This document shows positions 1-13,967 of a stretch of 41,376 bases of DNA, in pieces. The notes under the pieces were generated by a model. It saw only the letters and a list, made by a program, of their open reading frames with translations, made no database searches and was not told where the DNA came from. Every line of letters starts with the position of its first letter. Position 1 is the stretch's first letter. Source of the DNA: Hyphochytrium catenoides (lineage: Eukaryota > Protista > Hyphochytriomycota); contig FLMG01001810.1 of the NCBI GenBank assembly GCA_900088475.1, forward strand, positions 1 through 41,376, in the 5' to 3' direction. The position numbers and the translations under genes are program-made.

Positions 1-44
1 CCTAACCCTAACCCTAACCCTAACCCTAACCCTAACCCTAACCC
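1..44 (+). repeat. Telomeric repeat array (CCCTAA)n = TTAGGG-type telomere, chromosome end
   Basis: About 7 perfect CCCTAA units begin at base 1 with the C-rich strand 5', the expected orientation at a chromosome end. Confidence 0.97.
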
Positions 45-59
45 ATCTAAGTGCTAAGA

Positions 60-1240
60 TACGCGTACAGTGTTCTTTCCATGCTCTTTCTAGCTCATGC
101 TCCCTAAAGATTGCCCCTACAAACGTACTACCCGTACTCGAAATTTCTCCCCCTTCTCCACCACTTCTCTATCCCTTCTCGCGAGCTCTAACCTCTGTAC
201 AATTTGTTTTAGTGCTCTTCGTCCCCTTGCTCCTAATTTTTATTACTTTCTCTTTTCCCTGAAATGAACTCCTTTCCCACTTATCTTTCCCAACTTCTAC
301 ATACTCCCTTTTTGCGGACAAGTGCCGTCCGCCTGACTCCTTTGCTCGTGTCCTATATGCTTCTTATTCTTTCTAAGCCATTTTACGCTTTGTCAGTTTC
401 TCCTACTTCACCGCCCCTGCTTTCTATGCCATTTTACGCTTTGTCAGTTACTCCTACTTCACCGCCCCTGCTTTACTCTGCTTATTCTCACGAACGTCAT
501 CTTCTGTACCACCCCTCCTTCTGAGATGTTCCCTCTCCCTTGCTCTTAGTCCTTATCTCTCTTTCTCCCATATGGAAACTGCTCTTCCCATTCTCTTTCC
601 GAACCCTTAAAGTCCTCATTTTGTCTTTTCCCGTTGGCTTAACTCGTTTTCCTGACCAACATACTTCCCAACTTTCCTCCGATATCTCAACTTTGTCGTT
701 CACCTAACTTCCCTGCGCCTGCTTCCCTCACATTCTCGCAAATCCGTCCTGTGCACCATCCCTTCTAATAGTGTTTGTCGCCCTTGATGTCATCTTTATC
801 TCTCTTTGCTATCTATGATTACCATCTGCACTCCAAAATTCCTCTTAACCTCTAAATGATCCTTTGGTCATTTCCCGTCGGCTTGACTTACTTGCTCCTG
901 ACGTACATGCTTAAAATTCATACTCCAGGACCCCAGCTTTTTTACCCTCACTCCGATGCCCCGCTCCTGCTTCTCTGTACCGCTCTTCTCCACCTTTATC
1001 CTCTGTACAAAATCCTCTTTTTATTCTTTTTCTCTCCTTCCTCTTCTCCTCTTCGTCTATATCTCTCTTTTTTTACCCTGTTGGCGACTGCTCATCCATT
1101 CCCTTTCCTAATTGATACATTCTTCACTACGCTTTTCCCGTCTCCTTTACTGTTTTGCTCTGTCCCATATGCCTTTAGTACCCGTACTCCAATATTTTCA
1201 CCTTGTTGTCCCTCATTTCTACTTTTGTCTCTCCTGCAGG
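60..1240. repeat. Degenerate subtelomeric tandem array, ~250-bp unit, 4-5 copies
   Basis: Related cores ccgtccgcctgactcctttgctcgtgtcctatatgctt (325), ccgttggcttaactcgttttcctgaccaacatactt (631), ccgtcggcttgacttacttgctcctgacgtacatgctt (875) and ccgtctcctttactgttttgctctgtcccatatgcct (1138). Strongly C/T-rich. Confidence 0.65.
370..474. repeat. 51-bp direct tandem duplication
   Basis: tttctaagccattttacgctttgtcagtttctcctacttcaccgcccctgc is repeated immediately at 421 with 2 substitutions. Confidence 0.95.
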
Positions 1241-1586
1241 CAAAGAAAAAGGAAGCAGTAGGGAAGATGAAGCGGGAGTAGAAGCCTGGAGCATGCTCCG
1301 TGCCTTGGTTGACTAAGAAAAAAAGGTTGACAGACCGCTTTTTCCTTAGTTCCTTCTTCTACTCTTCTTGCAACTTTTTATTCGTCTATTCAAGCGTCCT
1401 CTATCCCTCTTCACTATCTCTGTAACGCTCGTCCCGGTGACAAGCGTCAAACAAGTTGGCAGATGACTGGAGGAAGAAGACAGGACAGGTGAAGTGTCGC
1501 CGTATTGGAAAGAATATAAAACTTTGGAGCGAGAGGAAAAGGAGAAGCGGAAGAAAGAGAGGAGGGAGCTGCATCGTCATTGTTGA

Positions 1587-1608
1587 TTCTCTCTCTCTCT
1601 CTCTCTCT
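1587..1608. repeat. (CT)n microsatellite
   Basis: About 10 CT units, read directly. Confidence 0.9.
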
Positions 1609-4600
1609 TAACGTTCCTTTGATTTCTTTGTCTGCCAAAACTTGGATCTCATGATCCCCTGCACTCTCTCACAATTTCATATACGATAGACGGACAAGAG
1701 GAGAAAGACATCAAAGAGCACCTGAAGGAGAAACAATAGAGAAACAGAGAGAAGGAATAAAAGAGAACATCCTCTGTGTATCCTGAGTGGTATCGTTAGA
1801 GGAGCAAATAGGTGCCTCAGGAAGACTTAAAACAAGGAGGAGACCTGCTCTCTGACAAGGTGGCACACGAGAGCAAAGAAACACTACCCGACTCTCTCTT
1901 CATAGGGCAAAAGAGCTTCTTGTCTCTATTCTCCTGTTCTTCTTTCTCCTTCATAGCTCTGTTGCTCTTCTCATTTTCTGCCTCGGAGTTCTTCATTTCC
2001 TTCAATAGTTGTCGCTCTCTTCGGTCCTCTTCGCTCTCATTTGTCTTCCTCTATCGCGGTTTTTTTGCTATTGTTAGCTTTAGCTTACGATTAGAAATCC
2101 TTCCAACACCGGAGAACGAGAAGGTGGGGGTTCAGTGCAAAGGCAACTGAAGAAAATGCCGATGGGATATTGAGTCTTGCTTCGCCCTCCCCCTTGCCTG
2201 AAGCCCTCTAGGTAGAGCAGATCTCTTCCGCCGTCCCGATTTTAACTGCTTGCAGAATTCCTGCTAAAGCGGCCTCTGTTCCTGCTTCCCTACTACAAAT
2301 CAGAATTCAGACTAGCACATAAACTTCCTCAGTTGTGGTCCTGATATACCGCAATCACTGACTCACAGGTGAAGAAGCAGCCTGACAGCATTAGTCAATC
2401 CTTCCTCTTCACCAACTGTCTTCTCTGCTTGAGCAGGCTACAAAGTGTGACCTCGTTGTTATTGCTTTAAGCGAAGCCAGACTGATTTTGCTTCCGAGAG
2501 CTCTAATAACTCCGTCGTCGTGCTGTAAAATTCCAACCCTCGCAGCACTAACGGGAGGAGAAGAAAACACGTATGAGGAAGTAACCTTACCAAAGCTCTC
2601 GTATAATGGCTCGGACCATCATCACCCAGTAGTAGCAGAGGAAGTAGAAGACGCTAATAACAACGACATAATATGTCACCCTGAGCACCAAAATTGATGT
2701 TGTCTTCTTGCGTTTTCCTTAGTCTCAAGCCCTTGATGTTATGAACTATAGCACAGTCTTTACTATACTGAACGTCAAACCCAGCATTTGAAGCAGATAT
2801 TTTGCTTGGCTTGCCTGCAATACTCTTCCAAAAGAAGATATTATTCTATGTTGCCCGACTGACCATGAATGACTGCTGCGAGGCGGTAACAACAAGCACA
2901 CAACGCATGGCGGTGAACCATGCACATCTCTTCCTTTTTTTTTAACTCACTGCAAACCCCTCCATGCTTGCCTCTTCTGCACGTTGCTTCTCCTTGCCTA
3001 GAATCACCCCTTTCTTTTTTGTGTCCTTATCTGCTACTCATCCATCTGTACTCCTTAATAGATATTCCGTCTTTGATGGCTTCCTGTTTCCATTCCAGCC
3101 TCGCCTCCGTTTCTCCGATAACGTCTGTTACCTACTATCCGTATCATCATGCCAGATGCTCTTTCCTTGATTCTTTCCTGCCCACCATTTCTACTCTACT
3201 TTTCTGATATTATCGCCGCTACACAATGACTTCCTCGCTCTCAGCCTAAACCTAAAGCCGCTGTTTGCCCTGACTGTCAGTTGAAGCACTATTTTTTTTG
3301 TTCGATCCGTGCGTCTTTCGTACCCCTCCTTCTTGTCCCTCTATAGTGTCATTCTTCTTCTCCCTCTCTTCTATGTCGCTTTAACCCGGTTTGGTTGTTC
3401 AGTCATCACTCCTTTCTCTTTGCGATCTGTCGGCTTCTCTCCTCTCCGTGAGTTTGGCGCTTTGCTGCTCTAGTGAGATTCTCTTCTCGTGATCTCCTCC
3501 CCTTTATCCCTTGCTCCTGCTCTGACTAAGAGAGAGAGATATAATCTCGCTTGGCTCCCATTGGGTCATGTTCCCTTCTTATTCCTTCTCGCGTCCCTGC
3601 GTCTACAAGTCGCTCATCCATTTCCATGGGCTTCTTCCTGCTTCTCAGTCGCTCTCTGTTATTTCCTGCACTAAAGGTAGGAGGGCGATCCGCCCTTTCC
3701 TGCATTAAAGGTAGCAGGAGAGCGAGATGAGAAGTTACTTCACCGGAATAATAATAGAAAAGTAAGGTAGGCTGAGAAAAGGAATAGGCCACTACTAATC
3801 TCTTGATCATTACAAAGGCGAGAACAACGAGCTTGAGAGAGTTCAGTTGATGACTGTCAGAACAACCTCGAGCGAAGGGAAGAGATGAACCTTAGCCGAA
3901 GAGGTAAAGCGTTTCCCCAAACATACTTCAAATAAGAAACGTATCACAACATTGGGATGGCAGAGCTCTCTATGTACCCATGCTGCCTTGCTTCCCACGC
4001 TCCTACGTGAGACAAACTGATGGATTACTTTTATTCCTCATTGGAAAGCTGACGCTGGAAGCCAGTCGTGGGCAGCGTCAATTAACATCTATAAAGTACA
4101 GGTTATCCTCTGGCTGCATAATAACTTTCCGGCTGCCATATAGATTATTACCAATCCACTAAAAGGAAGCCTCCTCTCCCTTGCTTTTTCTATATCCTTG
4201 ACATCATGAAGTGACGCCTCAGCCACTACTACGTGTCAGATGTATTATTGAGAGCGTTGGACTAGCGCCGCGTTGCCTATCGCACCTCCCCTGTCTTCTG
4301 TGCCTCTCGTGATCCAAGGCACAGTCGCCCATCATTAGATCCATCGTGCTTCTCTCACCCTGCCTCTTAGTTTTTGTTGAGCGTTCACGACCTGCCTGGT
4401 AGTGGGCAACCACAAGCCAAAGCGACATACACTTTAAGCACATAATCACTCAGCTATAGAGCCTGACAGCGACAAATGCCACCATGAGCTAAAAGACATG
4501 CTCTGTTGCTTCCAGAGTCCGCAACTACTGAGGTCATAAATTATAAGATTACAATCATTGCGTGGAAAAGCGTCAGCCGAGAGCTTCAAAGCAGAGAATC

Positions 4601-4778
4601 TGCTTGGTCTGCAAGAAGTCTCGGAATGATGCTATCCTTCTTGAATGTTGCTTGCGCTCTTACGTATTATTATTATAAATATGCTAAACTCAAAGAAGGT
4701 CTCCCTCTGTTCTTGGTGTTGGTCTATATCTGTCTTCCATCCCTCTTTGATGTGGCTGATGAAAACGTACCACCGCGT

Positions 4779-7700
4779 CTATGATGTCGCTTGTCTTCCA
4801 GCAAACCTTGCCCAACCAGGCGCCGACTCACAAAGTGCGGCAATGAGCCCCGTCCGCTTATCTTTATCATGCAGAAGACGGGCCAGATCTGGTACCAGCC
4901 GCCCCACCAGCTCTGGGTCAAACGTCTGCATTAGGTAATCGTAGAACTGCTTTGCCGATATTTCTTCCGTACCAAATCGGCGGGTTTGCTTAAGGAAGCA
5001 GAGATGTTCAGATGGCGGTGATGACAATTAGGGGTGTAGAGAGATAGGTCATTGTCAGTGGCGTGCAGCTCAGCGAGTATGGAACTCTTAAGGGAGCATG
5101 ATCATGGACCGGTTTTGCAGGAAAGTGCAAGGAAAGCCATATGCGCAGATATTGATCGCACCTTTTTGAAGGCATCAAGTTTCTTCTTGTCACCACCAAA
5201 GGCGTCTAGAACAGTCTGAAGAATGGCACGGTGCAGCTTCGCGGCCTCTTCACCTTCAAGGGGTTGCACATCTCCTGTAGGAGGCGAGGGAGTTTAGTGC
5301 TTGGCTTCAAAAGTTCTGTTCGGGGCCTACATTTGAGCTTACCTAGGGCCTTCAGCCGTCTCGCTTCCTTAGCTCCCGCCTCACTTTTATCAATAGCAGA
5401 CAGTCAGCGACGGCGTCAGAAAGTTTTGAAGACTGCACAACTATAGGGATTAGACTCCATGAAACAAAGCGAAGACTTACAGTTTCCGTTTCTCCTCTTC
5501 TTCTCTCTTTTGCATTTCCTCTGCTTCTCTCTCTCGTTGCAGCTCTGCCTCTCTTTCCCGCGCCTCTCGCCGTCGCTGTCTCTCAACTTCAAGTCGATCT
5601 ACAAAGTCCTTGTGTGCCTGGAGCAGACTACCGCGCTTTACCTCGTCTGTCATATCTCAGGTCAGCAACCATATAGACAGAAGAGGTGAGGAGCCACCAG
5701 CACGTGAAGGGCCGCGTTGCGACGACATTCACAGCGTTTGCGACACAGGAAGAAAGAAAAATTGTAAAGCATGGTCCCGTCTCTCTTGAGCCTCGGACTC
5801 GCAGCGAACTAATTGCCTACCTGGCAGCAGCTTGGCCATGTCTGGTACCAGAGAAACAGTAAAGCTATTTCCAAGTATCTAGAAGCAACATCGTTTAGAA
5901 AACGTTAGCTGGAAAGGATAAGTATGGCGTAGTCGTCGCAGATGTGTCTATACTATACGCTGGCGAAGACGGTTTGTCAAAACTGAATGACAACACAAGC
6001 GGATGGACATATGAAGGCTGTCTCGGTATCTCCCTACCTGCGCAAGATGCCTAATCAGCTGCTCCGCCGACGTTTCTCCGGACCCGTACTTGCGAGACTG
6101 AAATCGAAATTCCTCAGCAAGATTGCCTTTACCCAGCTCATCACCCCGGCGGGTTATGCGCTCGATAAGCTGGGAAGAAGAAAGAAAGAGTCGTAAGGGC
6201 ATGGGCCATGAGAAACAGGGCTACAGCAGACGCCAGCTAGGCAGAGTTGGGCTGCGCCAATCTAGTGCGGGACACTACCTTAGAGTAGAGAGCTTTTGCC
6301 TCAGGTCCCGTAACATATCCTGCCTGCCGTGCCTTCTCCGCAGCAATACGCGCTAGGAGAACAAGATAGTTTAGAGATATTGCCAGCGCTAACTAATAAG
6401 TATGGAGTGATCAACTATCAATTCGAGCGTGAAGTACGTCCGTCTTAAAGAGACTTCCGAGATGAACTGAACGCAACCTTTCTCTTCTTCCTCTGCATCC
6501 CTCTTGGCCGCCCGTTGCTCTTCTATCGCCTTGGCAATTTGCGGAGACCTATTCATCTCGATTGCGCTCTAATCATTTTAAGGAAGCGAGAAGATCAGGT
6601 AGGTTAGACAGGGTCATAAGTGGCAGTTTAGGCTTCTTAAGCTCATGAATTGGTAAAAAAGAAGGCCAAGATGGCCTATTGCCAGCGGACTTCACTGAGG
6701 TCTACTTTCCCTCTGAATGAATCACGTTCTTTTGCCTGGTAGCAAACGAATTGGCTAGATAGGAGACAGCGGCCGCGGCAGAGAAGATGGGCCGCAAGAA
6801 GGACAGCGAGGGTTTGAAGTCCGTACCTTGAAGGCCGAGGTGAACTGATCAAAAATTCCAAAAAACTCTTCTGAGGTCAGGATTTTTGGGTCTTCACCGA
6901 AGGAACCAACAATGGCCTTGTAAGAAAATTCCAAAGTGGTAAAGTCGGTTTCCAGCTCAGAAACCACCTGTCCGAAATGTAGTGAGGCAACAAATCAGCG
7001 CCAAGTTCCATGAGGAATCTACGAAAGAGTAGGAAAGAGCAGTGCCCACGCAAGGAGAGCTCCACTTGTGAGTCTCATTACCGTTTGGCAACAAGATGGT
7101 ACATAAAATCTAACAGAAATGTATCTCACGACTTAGGAGCCAAGGCGAATCGAAAACGGCCAGGGGTTCCCACAGTGTTTACCTGAGCTGCCTCCAGAAC
7201 AAACGGCTCCATAACCTCTGTAAAGCGATCCCCTTCTTGCGGTTGCTGCTTAGCAGCAGTCAACTGTGCTTCTGTCAATCTAAGATCTGCAGAAAGGCGT
7301 TGCAGCTCCGACCGTAGCGAAGGAAGGGAGATGGCCTTGGCAGAGGAAGAGTGCGACAACTGCATATGACCATAACAGATGTGGTCAGTCCAGGCTACGT
7401 CCGAAGACATCATGGGGGGAGGCAATTACGCATGCGCTGTTAAATCATGGTCGCGTACAGTTCCCGCATCGGGCGCATCCCGAATACAGCCCAAGATTCT
7501 AACTGCCATGACTTTGTCTGCAATCTCTATTCCGAAACAGCACTGCCTTACCTCAGCTGGCAGAGAGCTTGCCTCTGGAGATTTCTCTTCGATCACTAGT
7601 GCTAGATAATTCATCTGAAGATAAGAGGCACAAGGAGTCATCTTAACCAGGGGCGTCTTTCCTTCATGAACGAGATGGGAGACTAATAAGCAGTGACGGA

Positions 7701-10700
7701 TGTTCGGCGCGTCTTGCATAGGGCACAAGGGTAACGTGCAGTAGGTGAAAGAGTAAGGGCGAGAGTTCAATCGATAACACATCCAGCTGTCAATCTCATC
7801 ATACCAGAGACGTTTTGTTATCTACTGCTTTTAAGTTGGAGAGCTTCGAAAGAGTGTCCAACTTAAACCCGTAAGCTTGGCCTCTAGGCGTTGCAGCGTT
7901 CAAATAATTGCCGATGGCCAGCACAGCCTAACATGCGTTTCAAAGGTCCGTAAGCATTCTGGCGAGGTCCTCCAGCGCTGTACGCTACGAAAAGAGAATA
8001 GCACTAGACGGACCCACTCTACCCAGGCAATTAGCGAATAACAAGGCCCAGTTAAACAAGTCAAAATATTTCAAAACCATCCCATGACCATGGCGCTTCC
8101 TCGCGGCTGAGCGCAGACTCAAAGGGTCTTCCCTACCTCTAAGACTTTTCTTAGGCATCTGCTGTTCTTGATCTCATCTGTTGCTGCTAGTAGGGTATCG
8201 ATTTGATCTTGCACCTCAATAGCCTGATGGGATAGAAGAATTGAGAAGAAAAAAGTTAGATCGAGGCCCACATTAAAGCCCGCTTCTATCTGACAGTGGA
8301 CAGCAAGGTAGGAAGGGATCAAGACATGCAGCACTACATGAAAGTGCATACGATAGCTCACTGACCCTGTTTTCAAACTGCAGTCGAAATAGAAAGCTCT
8401 TGAGCCGCGGGATGTAGCGAGGAATAGTGAGTAGCTCACGCAGATACCTGCAGCGTGCAAGATCAGTAAGGATAAGACTATACGCACTATTGGCAAGTGA
8501 GTCGAGGCGGCATTGTCTGCCAAGAGAGACTGTCGATATGGACTACACCAGAGACTTTTTTCAAATGGCATTTAGGACACTTCGCTTCATCTTGGCTTAT
8601 GAATATTCGGGAAAGAGGATGACAGACCAACCACCATCTTACTTTTCGACGCTTCCAAGAGTATTCGGGTCTCCTTCAAAATTGCTTAATTGATCCATCT
8701 CCTCAGTGGTCGGCGCCTGTTCTATCAAGCTTGACACAATTTCCGGTGCTAAGAGGAGAGCAAAGAAAATTAAGAGTTAAGCAAACCCCTGATGTTAGGC
8801 ACGAGCCTTTACAACGTGAGAGCTGCCGCTCGCAAAGGTAAGCTCTAGATCGACTGGCGATAGAGAAGTAGCCTCAGTCTAGTCAAAAATACAGTCATGT
8901 AGCAGATGGGACTTTCTCTTACTCAATTTGGACTCATCCAGCTCAAAAATCGCTCTCTTCAGTTCAGATGCGGGCATTCTGTATCGAGCTATGGCTATTC
9001 CAATATTCTGTTGCCGCTTAGGGTCAAGGAGGAGAACGCTGGAAGGCTTCTTTGTACTTCCGCTCTCCTTCGAGTCACCAGCGGACGCGAACTTGTTAGA
9101 GGCTGAGCCAAAAGCGATAGATCAGTTCATTAGGATGAAGCCCATTGTACAGGAAAAGAAGCTACTTTAGTGCACCCGCATCAATCTATATATATATATA
9201 TACTGCGGTGTAAATAAACCAACCTGGCTTCTTCCTGAAGAACCATTCCAGGTCTGAAGCATCGAACTGGAACCTTTCATCGTTCATCTCAGTCCAAATC
9301 GTGTTGTTTAGCTGCAATAGCAAGTTGTTACTACTCCTGCTGCTTCCAGCGACCTGAGGACTCATGGTCACAGATGGTACTTCGGGTTATACCCCCACCT
9401 CTGCAGGAGCAACTTTGCTCCAAAACAAGCCTTTAAGCTCTACATTAGGCTTCAATTCCTTCTTCGGAGGCAGTTTCGGCTCAGGAGCTACATACAAAGC
9501 AGGGAAAGGTCAGCTGCCAGCAGAAGTGGGAAAGAGTTTTATGCTCCAGTCGGTATTATGCACAGCGAGCAGCGAAGACGGAATAGAAGCAACTGTGGTA
9601 ATGGCCTACTGCGGGACACCAAGGTTATCGGAAACAAGGCCTCATCAGCTGCAGCACAAACGTAAGGCAGCCAGTTTCGTCTTCCAGCTAAACCTGTTGC
9701 GGACAGTATGCAAGAACACCATAGAGAGAAGACATCCAAACAGATATGAGACGGACGTTTTGGCTTAGGCGGAGGTGCCGCTGCGCGAGCGGCCAACATT
9801 GCAGCAACCGGATTGGCCGGAGGTCGTGGCTCCACGCTGCTTGCAGTTGCCTGAGGGACCGCGGTGGCAGGAGACGAACGCGACGAAACCATCGCCCCGC
9901 TAGGGGAGTCTGCCTCCGGGTTATCCAAGAGTGATGGATCTAGGCCCTCTGTTTCATAGTGGTGGACAAGAAAGGTGGGCAGTCATCAGCAAAGTGGTAA
10001 CAATCAACTAAAGATTGAGGGGGTCGCAACAGGATCATCAGCCCCCGTACGCAGAAGGTACTTTTGTAGATATGTGCATAATTGACAGACATGGTGTAAG
10101 GAAGTTGAGAGTCAATGAAGCAAAACCTGCAGTCATCTTGAGTTTAATCTGTTCTACGGGCATCCCCATCTTCTGCAGTTTAAAAAACTTCGCAAACGAA
10201 GGATCTTCCCGAACGGTCATCTTTCTGGTCCCTGCACATCAAAGTATGGAAGGATTGGCGGTCATGGTCGCCGTAGAGGTCCCCAAAAGCACAACGTCGC
10301 TACCTGCTGATACAGCTGATGCCGTAGCATTCGGAGACGGAGCGTCTGGGGTGTCAAGTAGATCTGGATTCAGGCCTTCTGCACTCATTTTGAGCTTGAT
10401 CTGAGGGGGAGGCATCCCCATTTTCTGCAGTTTAAAAAACTTCGCATATGCTGGGTCATCCTATGGATGTTGAGATGTGGGTCCACACAAAAGTTTGAAA
10501 GGTGATAAGTCACAAGCATGAAATCGGAAACGGGAACGGGATGGGATGCGACCACGATGACACGACGAGCATATGGCACGGTAGTAGCAGTGGGGACCAC
10601 GTAAGGAGATCGAGGAAAAGGAGCATGATAGGTATGGTGATTGAGCATGCCCAGCAGACCAAGTGCAACATGGTTACGCCTAAACCAAGACAACTATACT

Positions 10701-13154
10701 ACCGATAAGAAGCACCTTTACTGTGAGAGAGCTGGAGAGCGGTGCAGACGAGATTGAGGACGCAGATGAAGCGGGAACGTTGGGAGAAGGGGCATCCGGT
10801 GTATCCAGTAGGTCGGGATTTAACCCTTCGGCGCTCATCTTTAATTTAATCTGCTCCGAAGGCATTCCCATCTTCTGGAGCTTGAAGAATTTCGCAAATA
10901 GCGGATCGTCCTAGAGGGAATGGCAAGCGGAAAATGTCAGGACGATCTACGTGGAGCTTTCTATTAACCTTCTAACGTAGGAAAGAACAAGCCAGGGCCA
11001 CACCAAAAAATTTAGACAAAGCTGGAAGAACCAGTAAGGAGTAAACTTTTGTAGCTCTCCAGTCCTTATCAGGAGCTAGACTGAGGCCAAGCTCAGGTCG
11101 TAAGGATTCTCTAGATGATTGCCTTCAAATACCTTTACTGTTAAAGCCGACACTACGGAACTCTCAGAGGGAGAAGGACCAGGCGGAGGCTGAGGACGGG
11201 TAGTTCCTGTCGTGGACGCAATTGTAGCTGCAGCGGCGTGAGCCTGTACGTAAACAGCAGTTAGTATTGGAGGACAGAAGCTCGGACAGAAACACTGAAG
11301 GGAAGTCATCGCCGCAGCATATCCAGTATAGAAAATGTCCCTTACCAGTCTTAACTCCTCTTGCAGCCTTGCCACCTCTTCTCTCAGCAACATGTTCTCC
11401 TCTTCAAGTCTTTGGTCCTCTTTGGGCGAGGGTTCCGGAGCCGGGGTTAGGGGTGGTGGTTGGCTTGGGGGTTGAGGAACCAAGTGTGAAGGAGGTTGGG
11501 GAAGGAGGGATGGGGGCGCAGGCGTAAGAGGAGGCGCCGGTGTGCGGGGAGGAGTAGGTCCGGTCGAAGTTGCTCGTGCTCTGGAGTCATTTGGGCTTTC
11601 TGGATAGCTAGTTGGCGGCCGAGGGCCAGAAACTATGGAGAGGTTCGGAGAGTCATTGGACAGCTAAGTATTGAGGCCTTCTTCCAAAAGTAAGTAATAG
11701 AGATAGCAGATTGATACAAACGACACCAACAAGGATCAGGCAGCCAAGAACAGACGTTGCGAGCCACCTCAGAGGGAGTCCTAATCAATAAAATGACCCA
11801 GAGCTGAAGAAAATTTGCAGTTTGCAGTGAAGAAGGCTGCAGTATCCAAACCTGAAGCGGGTGGTGTGGGTGTCAGCTTGGGCCCTGTGATTGTTCCCAC
11901 TGTCGGTGACGGCAGAAGGGACTGAGATGAATCGGAACGGGTCGAGCTTCCAGAGAGGCGCTGACTGGGAGGAGGTTGATACCGTCGCCTTCGCAGTCTG
12001 TTCAGCAAGCATTTTGGCTTAGCAAGAAGCATTAATCACACGTCCAACAGGAATAACAGGTCACGGAGAGTCGATTTCCAGCAAGCAACTGGGTCTTATT
12101 AAATCATCCACTCTAAACTCCAAGAATAAAACACGTTATAGACCCAGGCGACAGGCTTAACAACCACCATATCGCGGACCACTATATCGCTCTAAGGGAT
12201 CTTCCTACCTGATGCCCAGAATGCTTCTGCCCTTAGGACCATTCAGGGAGTTGCTGGAAGCCTGCCTCTTCACCTCAAAAACCTAAACGGAGACAAGCCT
12301 GGTCAATCCATGCATCTTTCCTACTCCGTCCTCTTCATTGCTCATAGCCAGTTCGGCCACTCTTACCTTCTCTCTTCTCCTAGTCCATCGTCTGCGTCTA
12401 ACCATGTCAAAGGTAGACGGTGTGGCCTTAGACTCACCCTTGAAGAGCTTCTTGTCCAAGCCACTCCAGCTCCTGGCATAACTCCAACCTAATAAATAGC
12501 CACATTTGTTGGCAGGGACGATGGATTGAAAAAAGCGGTTAGCGTTGACTGGACCAGAAGAGTCAAATGCTAATAGGTTTGCTTTAGAAAGTTGGGCCAG
12601 ACAAGACGATGAAAGACCCCGACGGGACGCCTTGGACTTAAAGAAGGGCGAGGAGGAGGACAGAGTGTCCTCCTCAAAAAATGTAAGCGACTCAAAGGAT
12701 AAGAACAAGCAGACTTCAGGGGCCATTCTTTAGTCTGCCGTTGAAAGTATGCGCGAGGAGTCAAGAGGACAAAGAAGAAAGTGTTCGGATGCTCCACCTT
12801 CACTGTCGCACTCTGTGTACGAGTAATCTATCTCCCAGTCGGAGATCCACCGCCAACCTTCAGGCAAGGGGAGACTCAGGGCAAGATCTTGCTCTCCTGG
12901 TGCTCTGCTTCCACCAGGCGGAACAGCGTGACGGAAACATGGGGGAAGGTTAGGGAATCTTCGTCATGATAGAGCTGAAGGATTGACTGTGTCTGTTGTC
13001 GCTCGACCCCAGCGCGTTCTCACCTGGAGATGCCCTCTCCTGCTCTGTCTGTGTAGGGTTCTCTGTCTACAATGCCCATCTTATCCGACCACTTGCCCCC
13101 CAGCGTCTTGCGCTGGTTCTCAAAGATCTCGTCCACATAAGTTTCAACCGTCAT
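4779..13154 (-). CDS. Multi-exon (~29) formin: DysF domain, Pro-rich region, coiled coil, 3x WASHC3/CCDC53-C-like motifs, FH2 domain, two PAH-like helical repeats
   Basis: Manual GT-AG splicing keeps one frame from ATG 13154 to TAG 4779. FH2 hallmarks: LKGLFWSKV..NNTIW, LLDPKRQQNIGIAI, IPRYIPRLKSFLF, VLAIGNYLNAATPRGQAYGFKLDTLSKL, FGEDPK..SEEFFGIFDQF. DysF hallmarks: EIFENQR, LPEGWRWISDWEID, CDSEGWSYA, VRRRRWTRRR. Confidence 0.88.
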
Positions 13155-13967
13155 CCCTCCCGCACAACTGGCAAATGCCAAGGAGACAGAGCGTATAACT
13201 CTTGTGGATACTAAGAGCCCTCCGAGCACCTTAGGGCCCCTCGCTGATGGGCAAGACAGCAGGCTGTGCGCAACTGCTTTGAAAGAAGAGCGGAGGTGGA
13301 AGGGAGACTACAAGGCATCAAGGACTACAACGCAACCAGGATCGGTAGGTAGCCTCATGCGTGCGGGACTACTGCTAGTCCTGCCCTGTTGCCGTCAGCC
13401 CAACTTCTTCTGATAGTGCATTGAAGCCGTTGTCGGCTGCTGCAGCCTACTTTTCTCTCTTCATGCTACAAGTAGACTGCTGCTGTTGAAAAAAGCTGCG
13501 GGCAGTCAGAGGAGAAGCCTGAACGACTGAACTATCTCACTGTCTGAAGGGCTGAGTGCTGAGTGGAAGGGATCCTAGGAACTAGCTTGGCAGCAAAGCA
13601 GGAGTAGGAGAGTGGCGGGAGGGAAGAAGGCAGCACGAGGAGTGAAGCTTGCAAGCCCTCGAACGGAAAGAAAAAGTTTGGGCTCCCTTGCGAGCATCAC
13701 GAGGACAACGTCGGCGGTTAAGGATAAGGTAAGATGGCATTCTGGCAGTATTGATTTCAACTAGAAAGGACTAGCAAAGGGTTAAGGTTTGAGGCAAAAG
13801 ATGCGCCGTAATGTCCAGCCCAAGATTGAAGTCCCACCCACCGAAATATCGGAGTATGAAGATGAAAAATCATACAGAAATAGTGAAGAAGTACCGGCTC
13901 GGGATCCGCTATTGTACCTTCAGAGTGAGGGTGCTTGCGAATCATGAGTAACCTTTTTCACAGCAGC

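What the first reader, a model, noticed from the sequence alone, without database searches (positions are those of the whole stretch)
4779..13154. Formin fused to a dysferlin (DysF) domain: a possible membrane-remodelling actin nucleator
Seen: ~29 short GT-AG exons, invisible as one unit in the ORF track, splice into a single frame from a DysF domain to the FH2 domain and beyond. Known: DysF occurs in ferlins, Pex30/Pex24-family proteins and TECPR1 (membrane repair and contact sites); typical formin N-termini carry GBD/FH3, PTEN-C2, PDZ or TM modules. Inference: the DysF domain targets actin assembly to damaged membranes or organelle contact sites. I do not recognise this architecture as described, but cannot search to confirm novelty.
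Basis: partly seen in the sequence, partly recalled or inferred. Interest (0 to 1): 0.8.

Follow-up and report, generated by a model that had tools for sequence, protein, structure and literature searches.

The report
Formin gene with DysF lipid-binding head
This is a real 29-exon gene for an actin-filament-building protein (a formin) that starts with a DysF lipid-binding domain; relatives in water moulds and in soil and water samples share this undescribed layout, so it is an old but unstudied family, not a one-off.

Summary
Observation confirmed. On the minus strand, 29 exons with GT-AG introns (ATG 13154, stop 4781-4779) give one open frame of 1,215 aa. The order is DysF, basic/Pro-rich linker, coiled coil, three WASHC3/CCDC53-C-like motifs, a complete FH2, then two ZNF598-type PAH domains.

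The DysF domain is genuine. The closest relative's DysF ORF passes Pfam Pex24p (49 bits). A profile that includes the window exons finds TECPR1, myoferlin and dysferlin DysF structures. All eight Trp/Arg stacking residues are kept.

The fusion is supported by relatives, not by RNA; no RNA run was listed. In one environmental relative, a single 1,102-codon ORF runs from the DysF C-half through FYVE and FH2 to the stop. Its only intron sits at the same codon and phase as the window's intron 2. In Saprolegnia, DysF, FYVE and the first CCDC53 motifs share one exon.

The gene belongs to a stramenopile formin family. Relatives carry DysF+FYVE (Saprolegniales and three environmental lineages) or FYVE only (Peronosporales, Albugo). 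The window gene has lost FYVE and the zinc ribbon. Exon 5 and the 5' edge of exon 6 are uncertain.

Membrane targeting is plausible. Damage or contact-site specificity is untested. No paper found describes DysF+FH2, although such proteins sit unrecognised in public databases. Verdict: new variant of a known kind.

The parts
4779..13154 (-). Whole gene: 29 exons, 1,215-aa DysF-formin (ATG 13154, TAG 4781-4779)
   Evidence: Model with all introns GT-AG and one open frame. Both protein ends match the orthologues.
12367..13154 (-). DysF domain, aa ~4-120, in exons 1-3 (13154-13024, 12904-12798, 12488-12367)
   Evidence: Pfam Pex24p on E1 (profile 250-279, E 0.022) and E2 (296-317, E 0.008). 50% identity, E 1e-35 to the DysF ORF of L001, which itself scores 49 bits on Pex24p. 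HMM of relatives without window rows: E 1.9e-18 / 4e-36 at Z=100000. Profile against PDB: TECPR1 DysF 8p5p at 1.7e-6, plus myoferlin and dysferlin. Intron 2 position and phase are shared with L007.
12209..12282 (-). Exon 4, basic linker (aa 121-144)
   Evidence: Flanked by the best acceptor and the second-best donor of the region. Codon-usage score 0.35, typical of an exon and held out of training. No Pfam hit.
11852..11997 (-). Exon 5, Ser/Pro-rich linker (aa 145-193); the least certain exon
   Evidence: Good donor (7.5) but weak acceptor (3.9). Codon score -0.01, ambiguous. An in-frame route from exon 4 to an acceptor at 11580 skips it.
11346..11632 (-). Exon 6: Pro-rich stretch, then a conserved coiled coil (aa 194-289); 5' boundary uncertain
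   Evidence: From aa 269 on it aligns with the coiled coil of the relatives. The acceptor is weak (1.2).
9900..10910 (-). Three WASHC3/CCDC53 C-terminal-like motifs (exons 8, 9, 10-11)
   Evidence: Pfam CCDC53, profile ~107-147: 7.9e-10, 5.7e-11, 1.1e-7. The same triple is present in all orthologues.
6827..9487 (-). FH2 domain (aa ~545-925), exons 12-21, preceded by a short PPPKPKPPEP stretch
   Evidence: Colinear Pfam FH2 hits at profile 58-372 on exons 14-21. Full-length alignment to orthologue FH2 domains, which score 2-372/372.
5821..6169 (-). First ZNF598-type PAH domain (exons 24-25)
   Evidence: Pfam PAH_ZNF598 at 1.6e-3 on exon 24. Orthologues show two PAH stretches.
4782..5274 (-). 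Second ZNF598-type PAH domain (exons 28-29) and C-terminus
   Evidence: Pfam PAH_ZNF598 at 7.9e-11 on exon 29. The C-terminal motif is shared with all orthologues.

Best explanation
One intact gene encodes a formin whose N-terminus is a compact, TECPR1/Pex30-type DysF domain. It is the orthologue, in an unidentified soil stramenopile lying outside the crown oomycetes, of an unstudied stramenopile formin family. That family's layout is [DysF]-[FYVE]-[zinc ribbon]-coiled coil-3x CCDC53-C motif-FH2-2x PAH. The window lineage has lost FYVE and the zinc ribbon, so DysF plus the Arg-rich stretch after it is the only recognisable membrane module left.

How it most likely works (inferred, not shown): the DysF finger binds a membrane lipid and places the protein on an endomembrane. 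The FYVE partner in relatives suggests that ancestrally this was a PI3P-bearing endosomal or vacuolar membrane. The coiled coil and FH2 dimerise, and FH2 nucleates and elongates unbranched actin at that membrane. The CCDC53-like helices and the tandem PAH tail stand where FH1 and DAD stand in classical formins. They probably supply partner binding or regulation.
For: Gene structure: the 29-exon GT-AG open frame. FH2 exons are colinear with Pfam FH2.

DysF identity:
- Relative L001 scores 5e-13 / 49 bits on Pex24p, and L007 exon 1 scores 3e-11 / 43 bits.
- The spliced window N-terminus is 50% identical to L001, E 1e-35.
- A profile including the window exons finds TECPR1, myoferlin and dysferlin DysF structures as the six best PDB matches.
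- The AlphaFold model of L001's DysF (pLDDT 71) has DysF structures as its top 13 Foldseek hits, then a gap from E 5e-3 to E 2.
- The Trp/Arg stack is conserved: W61, W63, W67, W81 and R110, R112, R116, R118 correspond to TECPR1 W116/118/122/138 and R159/161/165/167 (alignment, PMC10476172).

Fusion is real in the family:
- In L007, one 1,102-codon ORF runs from the DysF C-half through FYVE, zinc ribbon, CCDC53 x3, FH2 (2.9e-103) and PAH x2. Its single intron is at the same Gly codon and phase as window intron 2.
- In S. parasitica, aa 1-479 (DysF-like, FYVE, zinc ribbon, first CCDC53 motifs) lie in one exon.
- L001 and L005 are colinear with this layout.

Orthology: the FH2 tree places the window inside the family clade (100/100), apart from the oomycete DRF-type formins.

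Lipid binding by DysF: TECPR1 binds sphingomyelin (PMC10476172). Pex30 binds phosphatidic acid (PMC12101077, PMC12101078).
Against: There is no transcript evidence for the window gene. The exon 3 to exon 6 link rests on splice-site scores, an open frame and orthologue architecture. Exon 5 is ambiguous, and many in-frame paths exist.

No lipid-binding, localisation or actin-assembly data exist for any family member. TECPR1's sphingomyelin-site W77 is Lys here. The window FH2 sits on a long branch (1.38). There is no canonical FH1 next to FH2. I could not fold the window's own DysF, because spliced sequences cannot be passed by reference.
Confidence: 0.6

Rival explanations
1. These are two adjacent genes wrongly merged. 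A small DysF-only protein (exons 1-3 or 1-4, ending in a retained intron) would be followed by a separate formin starting at Met274 in exon 6.
For: There is no RNA evidence. Read-through after exon 3 or exon 4 reaches a stop quickly. Exon 5 has an ambiguous codon score and weak acceptors. An earlier scan note found another apparent DysF fusion in this genome to be probably unfused (s1-331080).
Against: Strong donors at 12367 and 12209 require downstream exons, and the only ones on this strand are the formin's. Only 735 nt separate exon 3 from exon 6. Four related lineages have DysF and FH2 in one gene, and one has them in a single ORF. Met274 would cut into the conserved coiled coil.
Confidence: 0.08
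2. DysF is a damage sensor like TECPR1, or a contact-site adaptor like Pex30, so actin is assembled at wounded membranes or at ER-organelle contacts.
For: The best PDB match is the TECPR1 N-terminal DysF, which senses sphingomyelin on damaged endolysosomes. Pex30 DysF binds phosphatidic acid at contact sites. The FYVE neighbour in relatives places the family at endolysosomal membranes.
Against: TECPR1 W77 aligns with Lys15 here, and the loop carrying W154 is different and longer. According to PMC10476172, TECPR1's N-terminal DysF is the only human DysF domain that recognises exposed sphingomyelin, so the property is not general to the fold. The protein has no reticulon or transmembrane part like Pex30. 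No experiment bears on this.
Confidence: 0.15
3. DysF is mainly a regulatory or protein-binding head, a functional stand-in for the DID of Diaphanous-type formins. It would act with the C-terminal PAH pair or the CCDC53-like helices to autoinhibit FH2, and would not act as a lipid anchor.
For: The family has no GBD/FH3 or DAD; it has PAH x2 at the C-terminus and amphipathic CCDC53-like helices in front of FH2. Peronosporales do without DysF while keeping the rest of the protein.
Against: Every DysF domain with a known ligand binds lipid. DysF sits next to a lipid-binding FYVE finger in relatives. No data show DysF-PAH contact.
Confidence: 0.1

Closest known systems
Oomycete FYVE-CCDC53-FH2-PAH formins (for example Saprolegnia parasitica SPRG_00061, Aphanomyces invadans H310_12319, Phytophthora ramorum 'Pr1' of Grunt et al. 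2008)
   Same: They share the coiled coil, three CCDC53-C motifs, FH2, two PAH domains, and the same N- and C-terminal ends. The FH2 tree groups them at 100/100. Saprolegniales also begin with a degenerate DysF.
   Different: The window protein lacks FYVE and the zinc ribbon and keeps a well-preserved DysF. It has 28 introns, against few or one in relatives. It sits on a long branch outside the crown oomycetes.
Environmental relatives L007/P0057, L001 and L005+L002 (metagenome and Logan contigs)
   Same: Their DysF is 50-54% identical to the window's. They begin with the same N-terminal Met-x-x-Y-T-D-E-I/L-F-E-N motif. L007 has the same intron position in the Gly codon before WSY. The downstream domains are the same.
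   Different: They carry FYVE and the zinc ribbon and are almost intron-less. They share local synteny with one another (zf-TAZ / formin / zf-PARP / bromodomain) that the window lacks.
TECPR1 N-terminal DysF domain (PDB 8P5P)
   Same: It is the best sequence-profile and fold match. It is a contiguous, non-nested DysF with the conserved Trp/Arg stack (PMC10476172).
   Different: The protein context differs (tectonin propellers and an ATG5-binding region, against a formin). The sphingomyelin-site residue W77 is Lys here, and the loop carrying W154 differs.
Formins with other membrane-targeting heads (plant class II PTEN-formins, class I transmembrane formins)
   Same: The logic is the same: a lipid or membrane module replaces GBD/FH3 in front of FH2 (PMC2386819).
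   Different: The module is different (DysF). There is no clear FH1. CCDC53-like helices and a PAH tail are present in place of the usual flanks.

Membership tests
Formin (FH2 protein) | Complete FH2 domain | tested here: met
   Exons 14-21 hit Pfam FH2 colinearly at profile 58-372 (best hit 56 bits, E 4e-15). Spliced aa 545-925 align over the full length with orthologue FH2 domains that score 2-372/372.
Formin (FH2 protein) | Proline-rich FH1 directly before FH2 | tested here: inconclusive
   Only a short PPPKPKPPEP stretch abuts FH2. A longer Pro-rich segment (aa ~185-262) lies about 280 aa upstream, and three CCDC53-like motifs occupy the usual FH1 position.
Formin (FH2 protein) | Nucleation and processive elongation of actin | not testable with these tools
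   This needs a pyrene-actin or TIRF assay.
DysF (dysferlin/Pex24-Pex30/TECPR1) domain | Significant profile match to DysF | tested here: met
   Single window exons are sub-threshold on Pfam Pex24p (14.2 and 15.6 bits, colinear). The spliced N-terminus matches HMMs built from relatives at 1.9e-18 / 4e-36. Those relatives pass the Pex24p gathering score at 49 and 43 bits. A profile including the window exons hits the TECPR1 DysF at 1.7e-6.
DysF (dysferlin/Pex24-Pex30/TECPR1) domain | Stacked Trp/Arg residues that hold the long loop on the beta-hairpin | tested here: met
   W61, W63, W67, W81 and R110, R112, R116, R118 stand at the positions of TECPR1 W116/118/122/138 and R159/161/165/167 (alignment, PMC10476172).
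DysF (dysferlin/Pex24-Pex30/TECPR1) domain | DysF fold (two long antiparallel strands wrapped by a loop) | tested here: inconclusive
   This was tested only on the 50%-identical relative L001. The model has pLDDT 71 and pTM 0.64, and its top 13 Foldseek hits are all DysF (TM 0.5-0.68). The window's own spliced domain could not be submitted.
Sphingomyelin-sensing DysF of TECPR1 | Exposed Trp77 and Trp154 at the finger tip | tested here: not met
   The W77 position is Lys15 in the window protein and Arg in relatives. The loop carrying W154 is longer and aligns poorly (residues from PMC10476172).
Stramenopile DysF/FYVE-CCDC53-FH2-PAH formin orthogroup | FH2 groups with the family; three CCDC53-C motifs; two PAH domains | tested here: met
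   The clade has 100/100 support. CCDC53 x3 and PAH x2 are confirmed by Pfam.
Stramenopile DysF/FYVE-CCDC53-FH2-PAH formin orthogroup | FYVE finger and zinc ribbon after DysF | tested here: not met
   No FYVE or zinc-ribbon coding sequence exists anywhere in the window by tblastn. The linker exons have no Pfam hit.
Diaphanous-related formins | GBD/FH3 head and DAD tail | tested here: not met
   No Drf_GBD, Drf_FH3 or Drf_DAD hit on any exon. The oomycete DRF-type formins form a separate clade.

The most novel reading that the evidence does not exclude
DysF and FYVE together form an ancient stramenopile two-lipid coincidence detector. It would switch on formin-driven actin assembly at endolysosomal membranes whose lipid make-up has changed, for example after damage or at a contact site. 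This would parallel TECPR1's damage sensing but have actin as its output. The window lineage then simplified the detector to DysF alone. The many other DysF fusions noted in this genome (flippase, Beclin-1, PLD, sterol glucosyltransferase; unchecked scan notes) would make DysF a general lipid-state sensor of this group.
Probability: 0.15. Interest if true: 0.75.

Novelty: new variant of a known kind. Interest (0 to 1): 0.5.

Why it matters
Formins are placed in the cell by their N-terminal heads. A DysF head has not been described in any paper I could find, although stramenopile formins are known to be the most varied in architecture (PMC2386819).

DysF itself is a poorly understood fold. Only two lipid specificities have been shown, both recently: sphingomyelin for TECPR1 and phosphatidic acid for Pex30. 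A conserved DysF-FYVE-formin family gives a simple setting in which to ask what DysF reads on a membrane. The domain is small, N-terminal and soluble, and it sits next to a PI3P reader. The family includes intron-poor genes in culturable water moulds such as Saprolegnia and Aphanomyces.

The finding also shows that public oomycete annotations miss this domain. For the scan, it is a confirmed multi-exon architecture call made from raw sequence.

Tried and rejected
- **RNA evidence.** No RNA run was listed for 9300-13200. With kind 'any', only DNA runs of the source organism, two soil or rhizosphere metagenomes and three tiny runs appeared. Laying four of these gave only short DNA contigs and no joints.
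- **Hidden FYVE or zinc-ribbon exons.** tblastn of orthologue N-termini against the whole window found none.
- **More relatives in JGI metagenomes.** A 43-aa exon was too short to use.
- **Synteny.** The neighbours of the environmental loci (zf-TAZ, zf-PARP, bromodomain) are not in the window.
- **Plus strand.** The two ORFs of 129-134 aa have no Pfam hit. There is no Rfam family in 4500-13500.
- **An in-frame path as evidence for the linker.** Rejected, because more than 30,000 stop-free GT-AG paths exist under lenient thresholds.
- **The window's own protein in the databases.** It was not found. The best hits to exon 29 were 52-68% identical.
- **Pfam, folding or whole-protein searches on the spliced protein.** Not done, because a spliced sequence has no reference. 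I worked per exon and through relatives instead.
- **Literature.** No paper combines formin with dysferlin domain, DysF or Pex24p in the sense sought, and none combines DysF domain with oomycete. FYVE-formin appears only as a table entry in Grunt et al. 2008.


Full report
**1. What is in the sequence**

- It has 29 exons, and every intron is bounded by GT...AG. Introns are 68-309 nt long.
- The CDS is 3,648 nt and the protein is 1,215 aa with no internal stop.
- The ATG at 13154 is the first in its frame after an upstream stop. The TAG is at 4781-4779.

Nothing else is evident on either strand. No Rfam family reaches threshold, and the two longest plus-strand ORFs have no Pfam hit.

**2. Domains, exon by exon**

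A spliced protein cannot be passed by reference, so I scanned codon-trimmed exons.
- Exons 1 and 2 give weak, colinear hits to the DysF part of Pfam Pex24p: profile 250-279 (14.2 bits) and 296-317 (15.6 bits).
- Exon 3 has no Pfam hit. Its nearest Atlas clusters are 'Peroxin/Ferlin domain' and Pex24p, which is a lead only.
- Exons 8, 9 and 10 each carry the C-terminal motif of WASH subunit CCDC53 (E from 1e-7 to 6e-11).
- Exons 14-21 hit FH2 in strict order across profile positions 58-372.
- Exons 24 and 29 hit the ZNF598-type PAH domain (1.6e-3 and 7.9e-11).
- Exons 4-7 and 11 have no domain. They are basic, Ser/Pro-rich or coiled coil.

**3. Relatives**

A search of 1.84 billion representative proteins with exon 29 gave 13 hits. 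The full-length ones are oomycete formins from Saprolegnia diclina/parasitica and Albugo laibachii. Their layout is FYVE, zinc ribbon, three CCDC53 motifs, FH2 and two PAH domains.

The spliced model aligns with the Saprolegnia protein from residue 5 to 1191 at 35% identity. A family search returned this architecture throughout the oomycetes. One member, Aphanomyces invadans H310_12319, also carries a precomputed Pex24p hit.

Inspection and alignment show that the Saprolegniales proteins begin with a degenerate DysF that lines up with window exons 1, 2 and 3 in order. An HMM of the DysF region finds no match in Peronosporales or Albugo members.

**4. Environmental relatives settle two points**

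*DysF is genuine.*
- L001 is an ENA metagenome scaffold. Its first ORF scores 5.1e-13 / 49.2 bits on Pex24p, above the 26.8-bit cut-off, and is followed by FYVE at 1.1e-11.
- Spliced window residues 1-107 are 50% identical to that ORF (E 1e-35). The alignment runs straight through both exon junctions.
- A profile of these N-termini that includes the window exons finds DysF structures as its six best PDB matches. TECPR1 (8P5P) is first at 1.7e-6, followed by myoferlin and dysferlin.
- An AlphaFold model of L001's DysF (pLDDT 71, pTM 0.64) has 13 DysF structures as its top Foldseek hits. E-values then jump from 5e-3 to 2.
- The eight Trp/Arg stacking residues described for TECPR1 (PMC10476172) are all present in the window protein: W61, W63, W67, W81, R110, R112, R116 and R118.

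*The fusion is real in the family.*
- In L007 (ENA and Logan contigs), exon 1 is the DysF N-half (Pex24p 3.3e-11). After one 45-nt intron, a single 1,102-codon ORF runs from the DysF C-half through FYVE, zinc ribbon, three CCDC53 motifs, FH2 (2.9e-103) and two PAH domains to the stop.
- That intron interrupts the Gly codon before Trp-Ser-Tyr in phase 1, exactly as window intron 2 does.
- In Saprolegnia parasitica, residues 1-479 (DysF-like, FYVE, zinc ribbon, first CCDC53 motifs) are one exon.
- L005 shows DysF, FYVE, zinc ribbon, coiled coil and the first CCDC53 motif up to its contig end. L002, from the same sample, starts in the CCDC53 repeats and continues through FH2 and PAH.
- Shared flanking genes (zf-TAZ upstream; zf-PARP and a bromodomain gene downstream) link L001, L005/L002 and L007.

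**5. Place in the family**

An FH2 tree puts the window protein inside the family clade (100/100), away from the oomycete Diaphanous-type formins. It lies outside the crown oomycetes, together with the environmental sequences, on a long branch of 1.38.

The simplest history is an ancestor with both DysF and FYVE. DysF then decayed in Saprolegniales and was lost in Peronosporales and Albugo. FYVE and the zinc ribbon were lost in the window lineage; tblastn finds no trace of them in the window. This history is an inference from a partly unresolved tree.

**6. The weak point**

No RNA run was listed. Laying reads gave only soil and rhizosphere metagenome DNA contigs, one of them identical over 272 nt. 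Those contigs do show that the organism lives in soil.

The link between DysF (exon 3) and the conserved coiled coil (exon 6) has no homology support, because relatives have FYVE and the zinc ribbon there.
- With splice-site matrices trained on the other 25 introns, the four donors used (12367, 12209, 11852, 11346) are the four best in the region.
- The exon 4 acceptor (12282) is the best acceptor. The acceptors of exons 5 and 6 are weak.
- Held-out codon-usage scoring makes exon 4 look like an exon (0.35) and leaves exon 5 ambiguous (-0.01).
- Many alternative in-frame paths exist, including exon 4 to 11580. The existence of a path is therefore no evidence in itself.

The strong donors after exons 3 and 4 still require a downstream exon, and only formin exons follow on this strand. 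I put the single-gene reading at roughly 0.85-0.9, with the exact linker exons unsettled.

**7. How it probably works**

What is shown: the protein has a DysF head, a complete FH2 and the family's flanking modules. What is inferred: DysF acts as a lipid-binding anchor. The grounds for the inference are as follows.
- The DysF domains with known ligands bind lipids: TECPR1 binds sphingomyelin (PMC10476172) and Pex30 binds phosphatidic acid (PMC12101077, PMC12101078).
- In relatives DysF stands directly beside a FYVE finger. From general knowledge, FYVE is a PI3P reader of endosomal membranes.
- An Arg-rich stretch follows the domain.

The likely output is formin-made actin on an endosomal or vacuolar membrane. 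The ligand cannot be read from the sequence. TECPR1's W77 is Lys here, and the loop carrying W154 differs. A regulatory role for DysF, possibly with the PAH tail, is a live alternative.

**8. Novelty**

Grunt et al. 2008 catalogued a FYVE-formin in Phytophthora ramorum and noted that stramenopile formins are the most varied (PMC2386819). Their tables list no DysF. No paper in the library joins formin with DysF or Pex24p, or DysF domain with oomycetes. Atlas formin clusters near the family do not list Pex24p among their common families.

DysF-formins are nevertheless already present, unrecognised, in public oomycete proteomes. This is a new variant of a known kind (formins with lipid-binding heads) and a divergent member of an existing family. 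It is not a new class.

Unchecked scan notes report DysF fused to several lipid-handling enzymes in this genome, and other unusual formins. That suggests DysF is a mobile lipid module in this lineage. I did not test those notes.

Noticed in passing
window 9900-10910 (-): The three CCDC53/WASHC3 C-terminal-like motifs stand where FH1 normally is. The same motif precedes FH2 in oomycete Diaphanous-type formins and in labyrinthulid proteins, including a kinase-FYVE-CCDC53-FH2 protein of Hondaea fermentalgiana (P0112).
   Followed up: partly
window 4782-6169 (-): Two ZNF598-type PAH domains replace a DAD tail. They are conserved in the whole family, and the last ~60 residues are the best-conserved part outside FH2.
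   Followed up: partly
window 12489-12797 (-) and L007:3619-3662: The intron position and phase (phase 1, in the Gly codon before Trp-Ser-Tyr of the DysF C-half) are shared between the intron-rich window gene and an otherwise almost intron-less environmental relative.
   Followed up: yes
L001, L005/L002, L007/L008: The environmental relatives share local gene order: zf-TAZ gene (opposite strand), formin, zf-PARP gene, bromodomain gene. None of these neighbours is in the window.
   Followed up: yes
window 11317-11588 and 12418-12686: Contigs from a soil metagenome (identical over 272 nt) and a rhizosphere metagenome (5 differences in 269 nt) match the window, so the organism or a very close strain occurs in soil.
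   Followed up: no
P0090 (EukProt transcriptome protein, 394 aa): A DysF domain close to this one (E 6.6e-25 to the L001+L005 HMM) heads a different protein that carries PF07059. This is another sign that this DysF type moves between architectures.
   Followed up: no
P0014-P0018, P0021 residues 1-110: The Saprolegniales DysF is degenerate. Tyr/Phe replace two stacking Trp residues, the segment between the two halves is shortened, and the Arg run reads R-W-R-K-H. Pfam misses it in all but one member.
   Followed up: partly
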